64,000 nucleotides of DNA. Source: Podarcis cretensis (Eukaryota). Under the pieces are notes generated by a model. It worked only from the letters and a program-made list of their open reading frames with translations, was not told the DNA's origin and made no database searches. A program made the position numbers and the translations under genes. Location of the stretch: positions 61,256,001 through 61,320,000 of the forward strand of contig OX638150.1 of NCBI GenBank assembly GCA_951804945.1, written 5' to 3'. Shown piece by piece: positions 542-16,399 of this stretch; within the stretch, counting starts at the first letter, position 1; each line of letters begins with the position of its first letter.

Positions 542-619
542 CTTGAGAGCTTCCAAGATTCTACCATCGTAGTCAATTACTACTGTATCACCCTGTTCTC
601 CTTTCAGGCCTGGAGGACC
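542..619 (-). CDS. COL23A1: COL23A1 exon, 78 nt, GPPGLKGEQGDTVVIDYDGRILEALK (end of COL1 plus NC2)
   Basis: tttctttgtag|GGT...AAG|gtaacc; diagnostic NC2 motif. Confidence 0.97.
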
Positions 620-1714: not shown

Positions 1715-1759
1715 CCTTGGCCCAATGTGTCCATCTGCTCCTCTTTCACCAGGTTCACC
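1715..1759 (-). CDS. COL23A1: COL23A1 exon, 45 nt, GEPGERGADGHIGPR
   Basis: tttcag|GGT...AGG|gtatg; corresponds to human GEPGHRGTDGAAGPR. Confidence 0.95.
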
Positions 1760-3858: not shown

Positions 3859-5173
3859 TTGGAAAAGGACTCGCAACTCTTGAAAATATTTCAGTTCTCT
3901 ATTTTCCTTGGGCTAATGTTATGCTGATCATGCGAAACAAAGATACTTATGCTATTTTACATTCCATCCTGTTTTCATGATACAGTATTTCAAAACTAAC
4001 CTATTTGCTTCTTCCTGTTACCAGAGCATATAAACATGCCATCTATGAAATAATGTCGTTTGCTGTAGGGACTTATAAAATTTGTACACTCCATTGTCAT
4101 TTCCTGTACTGGTAATCAAATTATTGAATTGCTATGCATTAAATTAATTAGCAGATTCAGGTTTGTGTGCGTGTGTGTTTTTTTTTTACTCTGCATGTCT
4201 TTATGTTAGAATGATTCTACATTTTTTTCCAAAAAAAATTAATGCAGTATTGTTTTTTATCCTATATTAGCAGAGAAAATGAATGTTCTATCTTAATTTG
4301 CCTTAATTTGGCAGTTTTTGTTATAATTTAATGATGCCTGTTGTGGAGGACAGAGCTCCATAAGTGCAGGATAAAACATTCAAAGAGCCAGGGTTTGAAG
4401 TCATTAGGTATGGGAAGTTGGATGTGCAGCACCAGAAGCCCTGCTAGCACACTAGCAATTTCTGATAGCTATGTGCCAATACCAGCCAAGGCTCATTCCA
4501 TCGCCATCCTCCCATGTGGAAATCCAAGTGCATACAGCTCTTTAAACCACACTAGCTGCCCTGCTTTTCAGCATTCGCCATCACATAGACAAAAGGGCTC
4601 AAGCTGTCTCACCAATTCAACATGAAACGGAATTTCGTGTGAACCTGGACCTCGCCATTTCACAGTAAGCATGCAAATACCCTGCTCTGCACCATTCATG
4701 TCTTGTGCGTGTTCCAAAAGTAAAGCATACATCGAGAATCATATGGAAAAGAAGAGGCTTGGGAGGGGAAGGAGTTACATAAGAAAAGAAGCAGTTGGGG
4801 AGCAGATTAAGCAGGACCCTCCCAACACCTCTCTGATCCAAAATTGTCATCTTCCTCAAACAAAAATGACCACTTGTGTTTTGATGCATACATTTGATTA
4901 CCATGTTTCATTTTGCTCTCCGTTACCAAGCAGGGTTAATACTAGTCTTGGGCTATGATCCAAGGGAAGTCTTCTATATGTGTAATTTTTCAGCTACAAA
5001 AATTTTCTTCAAATGTCTGATAAGCTGCTCCTGAATGTTGGAGAGCATGGCAGTGAAACATCCCATTAGATGTGAGGGGATGCTGCTGTAAATGCAAGTT
5101 GCAATTTCATTGCAAATGAAGCATTTTGCATGTTCGTATCCAGACCTTACTATCCTTCCCATTTGATACTTAC

Positions 5174-5236
5174 CTTTGGCCCTGGTAGACCATTTATTCC
5201 ATTCACTCCTATTGGGCCAACACTTCCTGGTTCTCC
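5174..5236 (-). CDS. COL23A1: Array exon copy 20, GEPGSVGPIGVNGINGLPGPK
   Basis: 63 nt, cag/gtaagt; followed by the 3.4-kb intron. Confidence 0.85.
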
Positions 5237-5327
5237 CTGTAATGTTTGAAGGAGGTGCAATGGAAAACTCTCAGTTTCTAAGCAGGCCAGGTGCTAGTCT
5301 CACTATCCTTTCCAATGTGATACTTAC

Positions 5328-5390
5328 CTTTGGCCCTGGAAGGCCATCTGTACCTTTCTCTCCTGTTGGGCCAACACTTCCTGGGTCTCC
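5328..5390 (-). CDS. COL23A1: Array exon copy 19, GDPGSVGPTGEKGTDGLPGPK
   Basis: 63 nt, cag/gtaagt. Confidence 0.82.
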
Positions 5391-5481
5391 CTGTAATGTT
5401 TGAGAGAGGTGCAATGGAAAACTCTCAGTTTCTAAGCAGGCCAGGTGCTAGTCTTACTATTCTTTCCCACGCGCCACTTAC

Positions 5482-5544
5482 CTTTGGCCCTGGTAGACCA
5501 TCTATGCCTTTGTCTCCTGTCGGGCCAGGGCTTCCGGGTTCTCC
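5482..5544 (-). CDS. COL23A1: Array exon copy 18, GEPGSPGPTGDKGIDGLPGPK
   Basis: 63 nt, cag/gtaagt. Confidence 0.82.
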
Positions 5545-5810
5545 CTGAAATGTTTGAAAGAGGTGCAATGGAAAACTTCCAGGGCTGGATCCAGATTCTG
5601 CTAGCAGAAGCCCACACAAGGCATTCTACTAGCACAATTTCCTTCCCTCTCCTCCCCCTGTGCCCTGTCATTGGCTGGAGTGGGTGGGAGAACCCCCAGA
5701 TCAGTGGGGGCAGGGTAGGAGAGGAGAGATTGTTTTGTTAAGCAAGCAGATATGCTTGCATTGATATGAGTGATGCCTAACCTCACTATCCTTTTCCATA
5801 TGCTGCTTAC

Positions 5811-5873
5811 CTTTGGCCCTGGTAGCCCATCAATGCATTTGTCTCCTACTGAGCCATTGCCTCCTGGTTCTCC
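5811..5873 (-). CDS. COL23A1: Array exon copy 17, GEPGGNGSVGDKCIDGLPGPK (Gly->Cys)
   Basis: 63 nt, cag/gtaagc; TGC at a Gly position (5835-5837). Confidence 0.7.
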
Positions 5874-5962
5874 CTGTAATATTTGAAAGAGGTGCAATGG
5901 AAAATGCAGTTTCTAATCAGGGCATGCGCTAATCTTACTATCCTTTCCCATGCGCTGCTTAC

Positions 5963-6025
5963 CTTTGGCCCTGGTAGACCATCTATGCCTTTCTCTCCTA
6001 TTGGACCAGGGCTTCCTGGTTCACC
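5963..6025 (-). CDS. COL23A1: Array exon copy 16, GEPGSPGPIGEKGIDGLPGPK
   Basis: 63 nt, cag/gtaagc. Confidence 0.82.
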
Positions 6026-6517
6026 CTGCAATGTTTGAAAGAGGTGAAATGGAAAAGTCTCATTTTTTAAGCAGGGCAATAAGACCAGTACAAGCAGCTG
6101 GACATCTGGGAGGCTGGGTAAGAAGACTCACCACCACTGCCCTCCTCAGCACTGCCCTCTGTTTCTGTCAGCCTCTTCTGGAGGACAGATGAGGAAGCCA
6201 GATGTGAAGCATCTAGTTAAAAGACCATTATTCTGCTGTACTGTATTTATTGTCTGTTAACTTTCATTTTGTTCTGTACTTAGGCGTTAGGTCTAGAGTA
6301 TATTTTTGTAATATTGAAGACAGTATATTCTATGTTTCTTGCTGAATTGTTGTTGTGTTTACAAAACTGCCTTCTCCCCAATCAATGTTTTGCAGTTTAA
6401 TAGGAAAAGGGGACATTGTTGTAAGCTGCTTTAGGAACAGCTCACTGTGCAAAGGTGCCATATACATAAACTTAAATGAACTAAACAATCTGACAATCTT
6501 TCCCGTGCTCTGCTTAC

Positions 6518-6580
6518 CTTCGGCCCTGCTAGACCATCTAAGCCTTTCTCTCCCGCTGGGCCAATGCTTCCAGGTTCTCC
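6518..6580 (-). CDS. COL23A1: Array exon copy 15, GEPGSIGPAGEKGLDGLAGPK
   Basis: 63 nt, tag/gtaagc. Confidence 0.8.
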
Positions 6581-6671
6581 CTATGATGTTTGAAAGAGAT
6601 GCAGTGGAAAACTCTCAGTTGGTAAGCAGGGCATATGCTAATCTTAGCATTCTTCTCCATGCACTGCTTAC

Positions 6672-6734
6672 CTTAGGCCCTGGTAGCCCATCTATGCCTC
6701 TCTCTCCCACTGAGCCAGCGCTTCCTCGTTTTCC
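6672..6734 (-). CDS. COL23A1: Array exon copy 14, GKRGSAGSVGERGIDGLPGPK
   Basis: 63 nt, cag/gtaagc. Confidence 0.8.
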
Positions 6735-6821
6735 CTGTGGTGTTTAAGGAAGGGCAATGGAACTCTCAGTTTCTGAGCAGGTATCATCAAGTCTTAGTAT
6801 ATTTTCTGATGTGCTGCTTAC

Positions 6822-6884
6822 CCTTGCTCCTGGTTGCCCTTTTATGCCTTTTTCCCCAGTCTGACCAATGCTTCCTGGATTTCC
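6822..6884 (-). CDS. COL23A1: Array exon copy 13, GNPGSIGQTGEKGIKGQPGAR
   Basis: 63 nt, cag/gtaagc; strongly diverged but all 7 Gly kept. Confidence 0.8.
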
Positions 6885-6976
6885 CTGTAGTGTTTGAAAG
6901 AGGTGCAATGGAAGACTTTAAGTTTTCAAGCAGGGCATGTGCTAAATCTTAGCCGTCATTCCCATGCACTGCTTAC

Positions 6977-7039
6977 CTTTGGCCCTGGTAGCCCATCCAT
7001 GCCTCTCTCCCCTGTTGGGCCAATGCTTCCCCGGTTTCC
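6977..7039 (-). CDS. COL23A1: Array exon copy 12, GNRGSIGPTGERGMDGLPGPK
   Basis: 63 nt, cag/gtaagc. Confidence 0.8.
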
Positions 7040-7133
7040 CTGTAAATTTTGAAAGAGGGAGAATGGAAAACTCTTGGTTTCTTAGCAGGCTATGTGCTTA
7101 GGATCTTGTTATCCTTTCCCATGTAATACCCAC

Positions 7134-7196
7134 CTTTGGCCCTGGTAGACCACTCATGCCTCTTTTTCCCACAGGGCCAATGTTTCCTGGTTCTCC
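7134..7196 (-). CDS. COL23A1: Array exon copy 11, GEPGNIGPVGKRGMSGLPGPK
   Basis: 63 nt, cag/gtgggt (the only donor in the array that is not GTAAG). Confidence 0.78.
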
Positions 7197-7287
7197 CTGT
7201 ATTATTTGAAAGAGGTGCAATAGGAAACTCTAAGTTTCTAAGCATGGATTGTGCTAATCTTAGCATTCTTTCCCATGCACTGCTTAC

Positions 7288-7350
7288 CTTTGCCCCTGGT
7301 AGACCATCTATGCCTCTCTCCCCTACTGGGCCAGGACTTCCTGCTTCTCC
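7288..7350 (-). CDS. COL23A1: Array exon copy 10, GEAGSPGPVGERGIDGLPGAK
   Basis: 63 nt, tag/gtaagc. Confidence 0.8.
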
Positions 7351-7439
7351 CTATAGTGTTTTTAAAAAGGTGCAATGGAAAACTCTGTTTCTTAACAAGA
7401 CATGTGCTAGTCTTTTATCAACTCCCATGTGCTCCTTAC

Positions 7440-7502
7440 CACTGGCCCTGGTAGACCATCTATGCCTCTTTCCCCTACTGGGCCAGGACTTCCTGCTTCT
7501 CC
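7440..7502 (-). CDS. COL23A1: Array exon copy 9, GEAGSPGPVGERGIDGLPGPV
   Basis: 63 nt, cag/gtaagg. Confidence 0.8.
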
Positions 7503-7593
7503 CTGTAGTGTTTAAAAGAGGTGCAATGGACAACTCTCAGTTGCTCACCAAGGAAAGTGCTAGCCTTTTTATCCTTTCTCATGCACTGCTTAC

Positions 7594-7656
7594 CTTTGGC
7601 CCTGGTAGACCATCTATGCCTCTCTCCCCTACTGGGCCAGGACTTCCTGCTTCTCC
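7594..7656 (-). CDS. COL23A1: Array exon copy 8, GEAGSPGPVGERGIDGLPGPK
   Basis: 63 nt, tag/gtaagc; identical to copy 7. Confidence 0.8.
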
Positions 7657-7748
7657 CTATAGTGTTTTTAAAAAGGTGCAATGGACAACTCTCAGTTGCT
7701 CACCAAGGAAAGTGCTAGCCTTTTTATCCTTTCTCATGCACTGCTTAC

Positions 7749-7811
7749 CTTTGGCCCTGGTAGACCATCTATGCCTCTCTCCCCTACTGGGCCAGGACTT
7801 CCTGCTTCTCC
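7749..7811 (-). CDS. COL23A1: Array exon copy 7, GEAGSPGPVGERGIDGLPGPK
   Basis: 63 nt, cag/gtaagc. Confidence 0.8.
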
Positions 7812-7903
7812 CTGTAGTGTTTTAAGAAGGTGCAATGGAAAACTCTCAGTTTCTCACCAAGGCAAGCACTAGCTATTTTTATTCTTTCCCATGCACTGCT
7901 TAC

Positions 7904-7966
7904 CTTTGGCCCTGGAAGACCATCTATTCCTTTGTCTCCCATTGGGCCGACACTTCCTGGTTCTCC
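7904..7966 (-). CDS. COL23A1: Array exon copy 6, GEPGSVGPMGDKGIDGLPGPK
   Basis: 63 nt, cag/gtaagc. Confidence 0.82.
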
Positions 7967-8056
7967 CTGGAGTGTTTATAAGAGGTGCAATGGAAAATTT
8001 TCAGTTTCTGAACAAGACATGTGCTAGTCTTTTATCCATTCCCATGTGTTCCTTAC

Positions 8057-8119
8057 CTTTGGCCCTGGAAGACCATCTATTCCTTTGTCTCCCATTGGGC
8101 CAACGCTTCCTTGTTTTCC
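8057..8119 (-). CDS. COL23A1: Array exon copy 5, GKQGSVGPMGDKGIDGLPGPK
   Basis: 63 nt, cag/gtaagg. Confidence 0.82.
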
Positions 8120-8209
8120 CTGTAGCATTCAAAAGAAGTGCAAAGAACACACTCATTTTCTAAGAAGGGTGTTCATCAGTTTTACTGTACCATTCAAGAA
8201 GATGCTTAC

Positions 8210-8272
8210 CTTTGGCCCTGGTAGACCATCTATTCCTTTTTCTCCCATTGGGCCAACACTTCCTGGTTCTCC
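8210..8272 (-). CDS. COL23A1: Array exon copy 4, GEPGSVGPMGEKGIDGLPGPK
   Basis: 63 nt, cag/gtaagc. Confidence 0.82.
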
Positions 8273-8363
8273 CTGTAATGTTTGAAAGAGGTGCAGTGGA
8301 AAACTCTCTGCTTTTAAGCAGGCCAGGTGCTAGTCTTACTATTCTTTCCCATGCACCACTTAC

Positions 8364-8426
8364 CTTTGGCCCTGGTAGACCATCTATGCCTTTGTCTCCC
8401 ATTGGGCCAGGGCTTCCAGGTTCTCC
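8364..8426 (-). CDS. COL23A1: Array exon copy 3, GEPGSPGPMGDKGIDGLPGPK
   Basis: 63 nt, cag/gtaagt. Confidence 0.82.
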
Positions 8427-8517
8427 CTGTAGTGTTTAAAAAAGGTGGAGTGGAAAACTCTTAGTTTTTGAGCAAGGCAAGTGCCAGTCTTTTTATGCTT
8501 TCCCATGCGCTGCTTAC

Positions 8518-8580
8518 CTTTGGCCCTGGTTTACCGTCTATGCCTTTGTCTCCCATTGGGCCAACGCTTCCTTGTTTTCC
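8518..8580 (-). CDS. COL23A1: Array exon copy 2, GKQGSVGPMGDKGIDGKPGPK
   Basis: 63 nt, cag/gtaag, intact Gly-X-Y. Confidence 0.82.
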
Positions 8581-8670
8581 CTGTAGCGTTCAAAAGAAGT
8601 GCAAAGAACACTCTCATTTTCTAAGAAGGGTGTTCATCAGTTTTACTGTACCATTCAAGAAGATGCTTAC

Positions 8671-8733
8671 CTTTGGCCCTGGTAGTCCTTCATTGCCCTT
8701 CTCACCTATGGGCCCAATACTTCCTTGTTCTCC
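8671..8733 (-). CDS. COL23A1: Array exon copy 1, GEQGSIGPIGEKGNEGLPGPK
   Basis: 63 nt, attaatctcag|...|gtaagc; its upstream acceptor is not of the repeat type. Confidence 0.92.
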
Positions 8734-9103
8734 CTGAGATTAATACAAATTAAGGTGAACATTACAATCTTGCTTTCACCCCAAAGTCCAAATATTGAGC
8801 ATCCTTCAAAAAGAAGTCAGGCTCTAAATGACAGTCTTTAAACATGGTACAGCTGTTCTGATGGCTATTCAAGTTATTCTTTAAGAATGGTTGAGCCCCA
8901 TAGGACCACAGTGAAAGGGAAAAACAATCTTTAATTTCTGATTCAGTTTGCTCTGTGTAGTGTAGAATATGACTCTCAATCACCAAATATATTTAGGATT
9001 GAAATTTAATATGATCAGCCTGTATGCCAATACTGCATTGATTCTACTTTGTTACCCATAATATATATGATTGGGGGCGGGGAGCTACAAAAAGGAAGTT
9101 TAC

Positions 9104-9148
9104 CTTTGGCCCTTGAATCCCTGGTTCTCCTGGGATTCCAGCATCACC
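9104..9148 (-). CDS. COL23A1: COL23A1 exon, 45 nt, GDAGIPGEPGIQGPK
   Basis: catcag|GGT...AAG|gtaaac; corresponds to human GDDGTPSQPGPPGPK. Confidence 0.93.
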
Positions 9149-10183
9149 CTGATGAAATAGAACACACATAGGTGACACTGAAATACAAAAGTGCATTAAG
9201 TTTCCCAGGGTCAATGCTGGCAGAAGCTCAACAGTTCACACTGTAAGCCTAACCAGAAAAGCAACTGCCAAATATTTTTGATCCAGAAGTTGGGACTTAA
9301 TTTCTAATACTTAATTTCTAACTGTTCAGAGAGAGAGAGCTTTAATTTATTAGCTCAGAGTAGTCTTATTTGCAGTGTGGATAAATCATGAAGACATCAC
9401 TCATTATCTGTGGAACACACTGAAATGTAATCCTTAAACGTGCTTCCTAAAAATACTGTAGCCATAGGTTATGTGCAGTTCTGAACAGCATGCATTAATA
9501 ATAAAGTGTTTTCCAACTTGGCCACAGCTACTTGGTGGCCCTTCTAAGGTCCTTTATATGGAAAAGGATATTTAGCTAACACAATCCAAAATAAATACAC
9601 ACATATCCTGCCCCTGACTCAGCTGCCTTGGAGAAATATATACAGATATTTGTTTCTTAAAAGCCCAGTCCAGATATTCGCAAACCACTCCATTTGGACA
9701 GTTTCTAGAGGGGTAGCTGTGATCACTTCTTGCAGCAAGAATGGCAGAGTCTTGTTACACCTTAAAGACTGTTATGGCAGAAGCTTTCATGTACTGGATC
9801 AGCTTCAGGGATACAACAGCACAGAGTGAATAATGTTTGATCTATCATATCCATGGATGGGTGAGCCCCATGTGATTAGCCCTGATTACAATGCAAAAGT
9901 TACACAACTCCCCTGCAGTTTGGGATGTTGGTGGATGCTACTGAAATCTCAAGAGCTTTGCTCCTCCCTTGCTCATTCTGCTGCTGTGCTGGGCAAGAAA
10001 CAAACCACAGTCTGCTCTGGATCAGAGGGTTGCTTTGTGCTATTGTATTGCTGGTTTTTTTGTTTTTTTGTTTTAAAAATGCTTATTTTAAATGTGTTTA
10101 GTAGTTTTAACTGCCATGTTATTTTACTTTCAAGTTGGAGATATTTTGTGACTCTGTTGTGATAACTGAGTTGTGAGGTGGAA

Positions 10184-10233
10184 ATAGATAGATAGATAGA
10201 TAGATAGATAGATGATAGATAGACAGATAGATA
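10184..10233. repeat. (GATA)n microsatellite
   Basis: Direct reading. Confidence 0.9.
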
Positions 10234-10296
10234 GGGTTGGGAACATGATGTCTGAATGCAAATAGCATTTGAAAGAAAGAAACATAAATAACTTAC

Positions 10297-10323
10297 TTTT
10301 CCTCCTGGAATACCAGGCTCACC
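10297..10323 (-). CDS. COL23A1: COL23A1 exon, 27 nt, GEPGIPGGK
   Basis: tttgttttgaag|GGT...AAA|gtaagt; human GEPGVPGKK. Confidence 0.92.
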
Positions 10324-12038: not shown

Positions 12039-12074
12039 CATGATACCAGCTTCTCCAGGTTCTCCTTTCTCACC
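12039..12074 (-). CDS. COL23A1: COL23A1 exon, 36 nt, GEKGEPGEAGIM
   Basis: ttctttag|GGT...ATG|gttagt; human GPKGEPGQDGEM. Confidence 0.92.
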
Positions 12075-12957: not shown

Positions 12958-13074
12958 AGGAAGGCCTGGGGGTCCCCTTGGGCCATCTTTTCCCGTGTCT
13001 CCAGGGGGCCCTCTTGCACCCGGCTGTCCAGGAGGACCTGGTGGACCAGCAGCGCCATCATTACCTTGATCCCC
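12958..13074 (-). CDS. COL23A1: COL23A1 exon, 117 nt, [39 protein letters not shown]
   Basis: cttatag|GGG...CCT|gtaagg; very close to the human segment. Confidence 0.97.
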
Positions 13075-16330: not shown

Positions 16331-16399
16331 CTTAAGGATACGTCGGCTAAAAATAGGCTGGTCAGAGAGAAATCCATGACTGAGGCGAGGGAAAGCCAT
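16331..16399 (-). CDS. COL23A1: Non-collagenous, probably alternative exon, 69 nt, MAFPRLSHGFLSDQPIFSRRILK
   Basis: Pyrimidine tract ...ttgactag|ATG...AAG|gtagaa; phase 0-0; strong similarity to the recalled COL25A1 segment MVFPKINHGFLSADQQLIKRRLIK at the equivalent position. Confidence 0.85.

What the first reader, a model, noticed from the sequence alone, without database searches (positions are those of the whole stretch)
5174..8733. 20-fold tandem amplification of one COL23A1 exon: an exon+intron minisatellite that can greatly lengthen a transmembrane collagen
Seen: between the 45-nt exons at 9104-9148 and 1715-1759 there are 20 copies of a 63-nt phase-0 exon (consensus GEPGSxGPxGEKGIDGLPGPK). 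Each copy has its own acceptor and donor, the unit is ~154 bp, and the copies encode 19 distinct peptides. Recalled knowledge: human COL23A1 (~540 aa) has one such segment at this position (GEPGSMGPRGENGVDGAPGPK). Inference: full inclusion gives 420 residues instead of 21 (+399 aa, roughly 115 nm of extra helix at ~0.29 nm per residue). That would lengthen the protein by about three quarters and extend the shed ectodomain. I know of no description of this array; it may be a lineage-specific change in a squamate cell-matrix adhesion collagen.
Basis: partly seen in the sequence, partly recalled or inferred. Interest (0 to 1): 0.95.

Follow-up and report, generated by a model that had tools for sequence, protein, structure and literature searches.

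The report
Amplified collagen XXIII exon array, variably spliced
A lizard's gene for the membrane-anchored collagen XXIII carries 20 tandem copies of one small exon where humans have one, and RNA shows that several copies can be spliced into the message in one species while a close relative mostly uses only the first, so the collagen rod can vary in length.

Summary
On the minus strand, 5174-8733 holds 20 copies of a 63-nt Gly-X-Y exon, each with its own AG acceptor and GT donor. The unit is about 154 bp and the copies give 19 distinct peptides.

The gene is a COL23A1 orthologue. The downstream exon encodes the NC2 peptide of human collagen XXIII almost letter for letter, and human XXIII has a single unit at this position.

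The copies are under selection. Gly codon positions 1-2 changed once on the unit tree where 41-47 changes are expected, and no splice dinucleotide changed.

RNA-like contigs show splicing:
- **Organism B (the window's species):** one contig joins the upstream exon to copies 1, 2 and 3. Further junctions involve c11-c13, c17, c19 and c20, and an array copy (laid on c20) joins exon 1759.
- **Organism A (about 3% divergent, array present):** the main mRNA joins copy 1 directly to exon 1759, with inter-copy junctions only in low-depth contigs.

So copy 1 is constitutive and the other copies behave as in-frame cassette exons of about 6 nm each. Inclusion of all 20 copies was not shown; c8, c9, c14 and c15 had no spliced support. 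Outgroup genomes could not be searched. No paper describing the array was found. Sibling notes from this scan on the same stretch agree with this reading.

The parts
5174..8733 (-). Whole array: 20 tandem units of a 63-nt exon plus an intron of about 90 nt
8671..8733 (-). c1, the constitutive copy
   Evidence: Spliced to exon 9148-9104 in X1, X5 and X7. Joined directly to exon 1759 in X1 and X7.
8518..8580 (-). c2
   Evidence: The c1-c2 and c2-c3 joints lie in one X5 contig of 366 nt.
8364..8426 (-). c3
   Evidence: The c2-c3 joint is unique. Its last 36 nt are shared with c18.
8210..8272 (-). c4
   Evidence: The X5 contig 8195-8274 covers the exon and runs 15 nt into the intron. No joint was seen.
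8057..8119 (-). c5
   Evidence: A joint to c7 was laid here, but the last 45 nt equal those of c6, so the joint may be c6-c7.
7904..7966 (-). c6
   Evidence: X5 contigs 7784-7928 and 7903-8081 cover it unspliced.
7749..7811 (-). c7, with the same exon sequence as c8
   Evidence: Its acceptor is used in X5. c7 and c8 are identical.
7594..7656 (-). c8
   Evidence: No X5 depth. Only unspliced contigs in X1 and X7.
7440..7502 (-). c9, which ends in Val rather than Lys
   Evidence: No X5 depth.
7288..7350 (-). c10
   Evidence: The X5 contig 7133-7352 holds c10, retained intron 10 and c11.
7134..7196 (-). c11, with a GTGGGT donor
   Evidence: The c11-c12 joint occurs in X1 and X5 and is unique.
6977..7039 (-). 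c12
   Evidence: The c11-c12 and c12-c13 joints occur in X1 and X5.
6822..6884 (-). c13
   Evidence: The c12-c13 joint occurs in X1 and X5. A c13-c16 joint occurs in X1.
6672..6734 (-). c14
   Evidence: Only unspliced cover, in X1.
6518..6580 (-). c15
   Evidence: Only unspliced cover, in X1.
5963..6025 (-). c16
   Evidence: Its acceptor is used in X1 (c13-c16). No X5 depth over its 5' part.
5811..5873 (-). c17, with Gly to Cys at the fifth triplet
   Evidence: Its acceptor is used in X5 and X1. The donor partner is c3, c18 or c16.
5482..5544 (-). c18
   Evidence: X5 depth is present. Joints from its shared suffix lead to c19 and c20 (table 5c).
5328..5390 (-). c19
   Evidence: An X5 contig of 103 nt holds exactly this exon. 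Its loose 14 nt match the start of c20.
5174..5236 (-). c20
   Evidence: The X5 loose end at 5181 reads an array-copy end (letters common to the copies) followed by the start of exon 1759.
9104..9148 (-). Upstream constitutive 45-nt exon
10297..10323 (-). 27-nt exon (GEPGIPGGK) between exons 12074 and 9148
   Evidence: Found from the RNA loose end beyond 9148. It is flanked by AG and GT.
12039..12074 (-). 36-nt collagen exon
12958..13074 (-). 117-nt collagen exon, 33 of 39 residues as in human XXIII
1715..1759 (-). Downstream constitutive 45-nt exon
542..619 (-). Exon at the end of COL1 and start of NC2, which identifies the gene as COL23A1
6026..6517 (-). Long intron 15, carrying an insertion of about 400 nt
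   Evidence: Only its two ends resemble the unit intron. DNA contigs break at 6109-6151.
5545..5810 (-). Long intron 17, carrying an insertion of about 180 nt
   Evidence: DNA contigs break at 5601-5634.

Best explanation
This is a tandem amplification of one 63-nt, phase-0 Gly-X-Y exon together with its roughly 90-nt intron, inside the COL1-coding part of a lizard COL23A1 gene. It most likely arose by unequal crossing-over or slippage of a 154-bp unit.

Copy 1 is the constitutive exon. Copies 2-20 act as in-frame cassette exons. Every exon is 63 nt and symmetric, so any subset keeps the reading frame and the Gly-X-Y register. Each included copy adds 21 residues, about 6 nm of triple helix, to the first collagenous (COL1) domain of the ectodomain.

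Inclusion is variable. It is high for several copies in the window's species in the one RNA sample available, and minor in a close relative. Selection has kept nearly all copies competent to be spliced and to form helix.

Shown: the array, the gene identity, the selection signature, and spliced junctions between copies. Inferred: that the longer proteins are made and matter, and whether the difference between organisms reflects species or tissue.
For: - **Array.** 20 intact copies are present.
- **Gene identity.** Exon 619-542 reads the NC2 peptide of human collagen XXIII in 13 of 14 residues, against 7 of 14 for XXV. Human XXIII has one unit at this position.
- **Selection.** Fitch parsimony on the unit tree gives 1 event at the 14 Gly codon first and second positions, where 41-47 are expected from third positions (2.95 per site) or introns (3.4 per site); P < 1e-16. 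There were 0 events at the four AG/GT sites, where 12-13 are expected. X/Y first and second positions change at 0.57 of the third-position rate.
- **RNA, all three runs.** The canonical CT..AC joint (GT..AG on the minus strand) from exon 9148 to c1 occurs in all three RNA-like runs and not in the DNA run.
- **RNA, organism B.** One X5 contig of 366 nt carries the upstream exons plus c1, c2 and c3. The c11-c12 and c12-c13 joints are unique at k=31. The c17 acceptor is used. c19 leads into c20. An array copy end, laid on c20, leads into exon 1759.
- **RNA, organism A.** In two studies (X1, X7) c1 joins exon 1759 directly, in X7 within a 1727-nt contig. Contigs carrying c11-c12, c12-c13 and c13-c16 joints have low depth.
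- **Precedent.** Complex cassette-exon splicing that changes the collagenous length is documented for the sister MACITs, collagen XIII and COL-99.
Against: - The RNA evidence is k=31 contigs from runs whose RNA status is only a guess. Depth per contig cannot quantify isoforms.
- Several joints cannot be assigned to one copy: c3, c18 and c16 share 30-36 nt of suffix, and c5 and c6 share 45 nt.
- Some X5 contigs retain introns (c10-intron-c11, c5-intron-c6), so part of the signal is unprocessed RNA.
- c8, c9, c14 and c15 have no spliced support.
- c17 carries a Gly to Cys change that would interrupt the helix.
- Only one RNA run of the window's own species was laid.
- There is no protein-level evidence.
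Confidence: 0.7

Rival explanations
1. All 20 copies are constitutive exons. The normal protein of this lizard would then carry 420 residues here instead of 21, about 114 nm of extra helix.
For: All copies keep their frame, Gly codons and splice sites. In X5 the contig runs from the constitutive exons through c1, c2 and c3 without a branch to exon 1759.
Against: X5 has no depth over c8, c9 or the 5' part of c16, and almost none over c14 and c15. A joint from the c3/c18 suffix leads straight to c17. Organism A, which carries the array, makes mainly the c1-only form.
Confidence: 0.05
2. Copies 2-20 are pseudo-exons in an intronic minisatellite. Their appearance in RNA would be splicing noise or unprocessed intermediates, and the functional protein would always have one copy.
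For: The dominant mRNA in organism A is c1 joined to exon 1759, in two studies. Some contigs retain introns. c17 has a Gly to Cys change.
Against: Neutral decay would have destroyed about 40 Gly codon positions and about 12 splice-site positions on the tree, but only one and none were lost. In X5 the c1-c2-c3 chain lies in the same contig as the constitutive exons, with no c1-to-1759 form detected.
Confidence: 0.17
3. The array is an assembly artefact, an over-expanded repeat.
For: Repeats of this kind are prone to mis-assembly. c7-c10 are nearly identical.
Against: There are 19 distinct peptides and introns that differ by up to 47%. Short-read DNA contigs of X19 tile 5000-7323 and parts of 7919-9200 with no differing letters in the listed pieces. 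Organism A contigs cover the same units at about 97% identity.
Confidence: 0.02
4. The gene is another MACIT (COL25A1 or COL13A1), not COL23A1.
For: The 117-nt exon motif is shared by XXIII and XXV. An XXV-like non-collagenous exon lies at 16399-16331.
Against: The NC2 peptide and the two exons before it match human XXIII better than XXV or XIII: 13/14, 11/12 and 11/15 against 7/14, 9/12 and 8/15 for XXV.
Confidence: 0.04

Closest known systems
Titin PEVK exon arrays
   Same: Many short, symmetric, tandemly duplicated exons. The number of repeats changes over evolution by slippage or recombination. [quoted passage not shown]
   Different: Titin's repeats encode a disordered spring in an intracellular protein. 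Here the repeats encode a rigid collagen triple helix in a type II membrane protein. The unit here is a single exon plus a roughly 90-nt intron, repeated 20 times and still recognisable as a 154-bp tandem repeat.
Cassette-exon splicing of MACIT collagens (collagen XIII, C. elegans COL-99)
   Same: The same gene family. In-frame skipping of collagenous exons gives ectodomains of different length, with the transmembrane and C-terminal parts kept (PMC4678570).
   Different: In those genes the skipped exons are unique ancestral exons, not a recent amplification of one exon. The same paper says splicing of XXIII is not adequately documented.
Ancestral build-up of collagen genes by duplication of a short Gly-X-Y exon (textbook, recalled, not tested here)
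   Same: Exon-plus-intron duplication extends a triple helix in multiples of Gly-X-Y.
   Different: That process is ancient and fixed across vertebrates. This array is young enough to keep homologous introns (2-47% divergence), and human XXIII has only one unit.
Mutually exclusive exon clusters (e.g. Dscam)
   Same: Tandem duplicates of one exon, each with its own splice sites.
   Different: Those clusters put one exon per transcript. Here at least three copies sit in series in one RNA contig.

Membership tests
COL23A1 (collagen XXIII, MACIT) | NC2 peptide after COL1 as in collagen XXIII (VVIDYDGRIL.AL.) | tested here: met
   Exon 619-542 matches the human XXIII row in 13 of 14 residues, against 7 of 14 for XXV.
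COL23A1 (collagen XXIII, MACIT) | Order and sequence of the COL1 exons around the unit | tested here: met
   Exons 13074, 1759 and 619 match human XXIII in 33/39, 11/15 and 11/12 residues. The unit consensus matches in 15/21. The comparison was made exon by exon, by eye, against an OCR-read published alignment.
COL23A1 (collagen XXIII, MACIT) | N-terminal cytoplasmic and transmembrane domain, furin site, conserved C-terminal peptide | not testable with these tools
These exons lie outside the window or were not located.
Tandemly duplicated cassette-exon array | Homologous tandem exons, each with its own acceptor and donor, with symmetric phase | tested here: met
   20 of 20 copies have AG and GT. 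All are 63 nt and phase 0.
Tandemly duplicated cassette-exon array | Variable inclusion in mature RNA | tested here: met
   A c1-only form in organism A; c1-c2-c3 and other inter-copy joints in organism B; low-depth inter-copy joints in A. This rests on contigs only, so it is not quantitative.
Tandemly duplicated cassette-exon array | Coding constraint on the duplicates | tested here: met
   Gly codons and splice sites are conserved against a neutral background.
Mutually exclusive exon cluster | Exactly one exon of the cluster per transcript | tested here: not met
   The X5 contig holds c1, c2 and c3 in series.
Minisatellite / VNTR | Copy-number polymorphism within the species | not tested
   DNA runs of organism B hold 0.76-0.89 of the sampled words, but short-read contigs cannot count copies.

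The most novel reading that the evidence does not exclude
The array is a selection-maintained length dial for a transmembrane collagen. By choosing how many of up to 20 interchangeable 21-residue helix modules are spliced in, lizard cells would set the reach of the collagen XXIII ectodomain in steps of about 6 nm. The default setting would differ between closely related species or between tissues.
Probability: 0.4. Interest if true: 0.75.

Novelty: new variant of a known kind. Interest (0 to 1): 0.62.

Why it matters
Orthologous vertebrate collagens usually keep a very stable exon structure. Collagen XXIII is a conserved cell-surface collagen with a single unit at this position in humans.

A young 20-copy exon array that is kept translatable by selection and is spliced in different amounts in two close relatives gives a natural system for two questions. 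The first is how the length of a membrane-anchored triple helix affects adhesion and shedding. The second is how the spliceosome chooses among near-identical 63-nt exons separated by 90-nt introns.

It also shows that gene models for such loci are likely to be wrong or incomplete in automatic annotation.

Tried and rejected
- **phmmer against representatives.** The 39-aa exon returned only bacterial or phage collagen-like proteins and one ORF fragment, P0148. Nothing was named and no vertebrate collagen XXIII appeared.
- **The search for homologous proteins.** A 77-aa window ORF covering c16 found no candidates.
- **Joined model.** Comparisons were made exon by exon.
- **Papers.** Searches for the array, for window peptides, for COL23A1 with lizard, and for tandem exon duplication with collagen gave nothing relevant.
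- **Long introns.** Rfam and inverted-repeat scans of the array and its two long introns found nothing, and BLAST found no second copy of the insertions in the window.
- **Mutually exclusive splicing.** Rejected because c1, c2 and c3 lie in one contig.
- **Depth.** I did not use contig depth to rank isoforms beyond a rough major/minor contrast, because the tool warns against it.
Full report
**Observation**

Tandem Repeats Finder reports a 154-bp period over 5149-5577 and 6497-8736, with higher-order periods of 306 and 461. Reading the minus strand and scanning for AG, then 63 nt, then GT with Gly at every third codon gives exactly 20 exons between 8733 and 5174.
- All 20 are stop-free and all have AG and GT.
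- They give 19 distinct peptides, because c7 and c8 are identical.
- c17 (5873-5811) has Cys in place of the fifth Gly.
- Introns are 87-94 nt, except 492 nt after c15 and 266 nt after c17. In both long introns only the ends resemble the unit intron, so each holds an insertion.
- The window has no N.

**Gene identity**

The minus strand carries collagen exons at 13074-12958, 12074-12039, 9148-9104, 1759-1715 and 619-542. A further 27-nt exon at 10323-10297 was located from an RNA loose end.

Exon 619-542 continues past the last Gly-X-Y into a non-collagenous peptide. [quoted passage not shown]

| Window element | Human XXIII | Human XXV |
|---|---|---|
| NC2 peptide of exon 619-542 | 13/14 | 7/14 |
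| Collagenous part of exon 619-542 | 11/12 | 9/12 |
| Exon 1759-1715 | 11/15 | 8/15 |
| Exon 13074-12958 | 33/39 | about 29/39 |

The same alignment shows one unit at this place in human XXIII, which ends at residue 540.

A phmmer search with the 39-aa exon returned only prokaryotic or phage collagen-like proteins and an unnamed ORF fragment.

**Selection**

I aligned the 20 units, built a tree and counted Fitch parsimony events per site class.

| Site class | Events per site |
|---|---|
| Intron, away from splice sites | 2.7-4.2 |
| Third codon positions | 2.7-3.1 |
| X/Y first and second positions | 1.75 |
| Gly first and second positions | 0.07 (1 event at 14 sites) |
| AG and GT dinucleotides | 0 (0 events at 4 sites) |

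- From third-position or intron rates, 41-47 events are expected at the Gly positions (P < 1e-16).
- At the splice dinucleotides, 12-13 events are expected (P about 1e-6).
- A plain count agrees: 1 of 280 Gly G positions differs from the consensus, against 250 of 1533 intron positions.

Gene conversion could homogenise copies, but it would not spare Gly codons and splice sites alone. This is the signature of exons that are translated as collagen.

**History of the array**
- Intron pairs range from 2% different (i1 and i4) and 3% (i7 and i8), through 8% for the non-adjacent pair i3 and i18, up to 47%. The median is 25%.
- Similarity is mosaic, with breakpoints inside exons. c2 and c5 share their first 38 nt. 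c5 and c6 share their last 45 nt. c3 and c18 share their last 36 nt.
- This pattern fits repeated unequal exchange or conversion over a long time.
- Contigs of organism A differ from the window by about 3% and cover the same units, including the intron-15 insertion. So the array predates the split of A and B, and its oldest duplications are several times older than that split (inference).

**Expression**

The run search listed 23 runs from seven coded organisms. None is on record as RNA. I laid X1 and X7 (organism A, two studies), X5 (organism B) and X19 (organism B, DNA) on 5000-9200.
- X19 matches the window with no differing letters in the listed contigs and shows no joints.
- All three other runs carry a joint from 9104 to 8733 with CT..AC ends, which is a GT..AG intron on the minus strand. 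They therefore contain spliced RNA.

Organism A:
- The letters beyond 8670 are the start of exon 1759-1715, checked.
- So the main mRNA is exon 9148, then c1, then exon 1759. In X7 this sits inside a 1727-nt contig.
- X1 also has low-depth unspliced cover of most of the array.
- X1 has joints c11-c12, c12-c13, c13-c16 and one into c17, all in contigs of low depth.

Organism B (X5):
- A 366-nt contig holds 139 nt of upstream exons, exon 9148, c1, c2 and 55 nt of c3.
- No c1-to-1759 form appears.
- Further joints are c11-c12 and c12-c13, in a contig that also retains intron 10.
- One joint runs into c7 from c5 or c6.
- One joint runs into c17 from the c3/c18/c16 suffix.
- Joints run from the same shared suffix into c19 and into c20.
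- A contig holds exactly c19 and leads into the start of c20.
- A loose end reads the common end of an array copy, in a contig laid on c20, followed by exon 1759.
- X5 has no depth over c8, c9 or the 5' part of c16, and almost none over c14 and c15.

**Limits of the RNA evidence**
- These are k=31 contigs. Where two copies share 30 nt or more at an exon end, the partner of a joint cannot be named.
- The c1-c2, c2-c3, c11-c12, c12-c13 and c13-c16 joints rest on unique words. The c3-c17 and c5-c7 joints do not.
- Depth is one figure per contig, and the tool warns against ranking by it. I use only the coarse contrast between the main contig and the rest.
- Only one RNA run of the window's species was laid. 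Tissues are unknown because names are coded.
- The difference between A and B may therefore reflect species or tissue.

**Reading**
- c1 is constitutive.
- c2-c20 are in-frame cassette exons whose use varies.
- Each adds 21 residues, about 6.0 nm at 0.286 nm per residue. All 19 extra copies would add about 114 nm.
- The data for organism B are compatible with a main form of roughly seven or eight copies (c1-c3 plus c17-c20) and rarer forms with middle copies. That is an inference from contigs and needs long-read cDNA.
- The pseudo-exon rival fits organism A, but not the selection signature or the X5 contig.

**What is known**
- Cassette splicing that changes collagenous length is documented for collagen XIII and C. 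elegans COL-99. The same paper says splicing of XXIII is not adequately documented.
- The closest working analogue is the titin PEVK region: many short duplicated exons whose number evolves by slippage and whose inclusion sets segment length.
- No paper in the library mentions this array, or COL23A1 exon duplication.
- I file it as a new variant of a known kind. It is an amplified cassette-exon array, but in a triple-helical membrane collagen, and it is still recognisable as an exon-plus-intron minisatellite.

**What could not be done**
- A protein search with a window ORF over c16 found no candidates.
- No eukaryotic genome collection was available, so copy numbers in other squamates, birds or turtles are unknown.
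- Lineage-specificity rests on human having one copy and close relatives sharing the array.

**Earlier notes**

Sibling first-reader notes on the same stretch propose purifying selection and a splice-tunable cassette array. Both agree with what I measured.

Noticed in passing
window 16331-16399 (-): A 69-nt non-collagenous exon candidate flanked by AG and GT. Its peptide resembles the NC segment that human collagen XXV, but not human XXIII, has just before the conserved 117-nt exon. Joined to exon 13074 it would read K-G-D where human XXIII reads R-G-D. No RNA evidence was obtained for it.
   Followed up: partly
window 5811-5873 (-), codon 13: c17 has TGC (Cys) where every other copy has a Gly codon, yet its acceptor is used in RNA of both organisms. 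In a homotrimer this would interrupt the helix and put three cysteines at one level.
   Followed up: partly
It was found only because RNA contigs run into it from exon 9148.
   Followed up: yes
window 5601-5634 and 6109-6151: Short-read DNA contigs of X19 break inside the insertions of introns 17 and 15, as expected if these are dispersed repeats. There was no Rfam hit, no inverted repeat and no second copy in the window.
   Followed up: partly
window 7288-7811, 6977-7039, 6672-6734 (-): Copies c7-c10, c12 and c14 carry G-x-x-G-E-R triplets, the general form of collagen integrin-binding motifs (recalled, not tested). These are among the copies with the least spliced support in X5.
   Followed up: no
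window 7788: An organism A contig switches at 7788, inside c7, to letters typical of c2, c3, c5 or c6. This suggests a hybrid copy or a different unit order in that species (table 7).
   Followed up: no
window 10184-10234: An (ATAG)13 microsatellite lies in the intron upstream of exon 9148.
   Followed up: no
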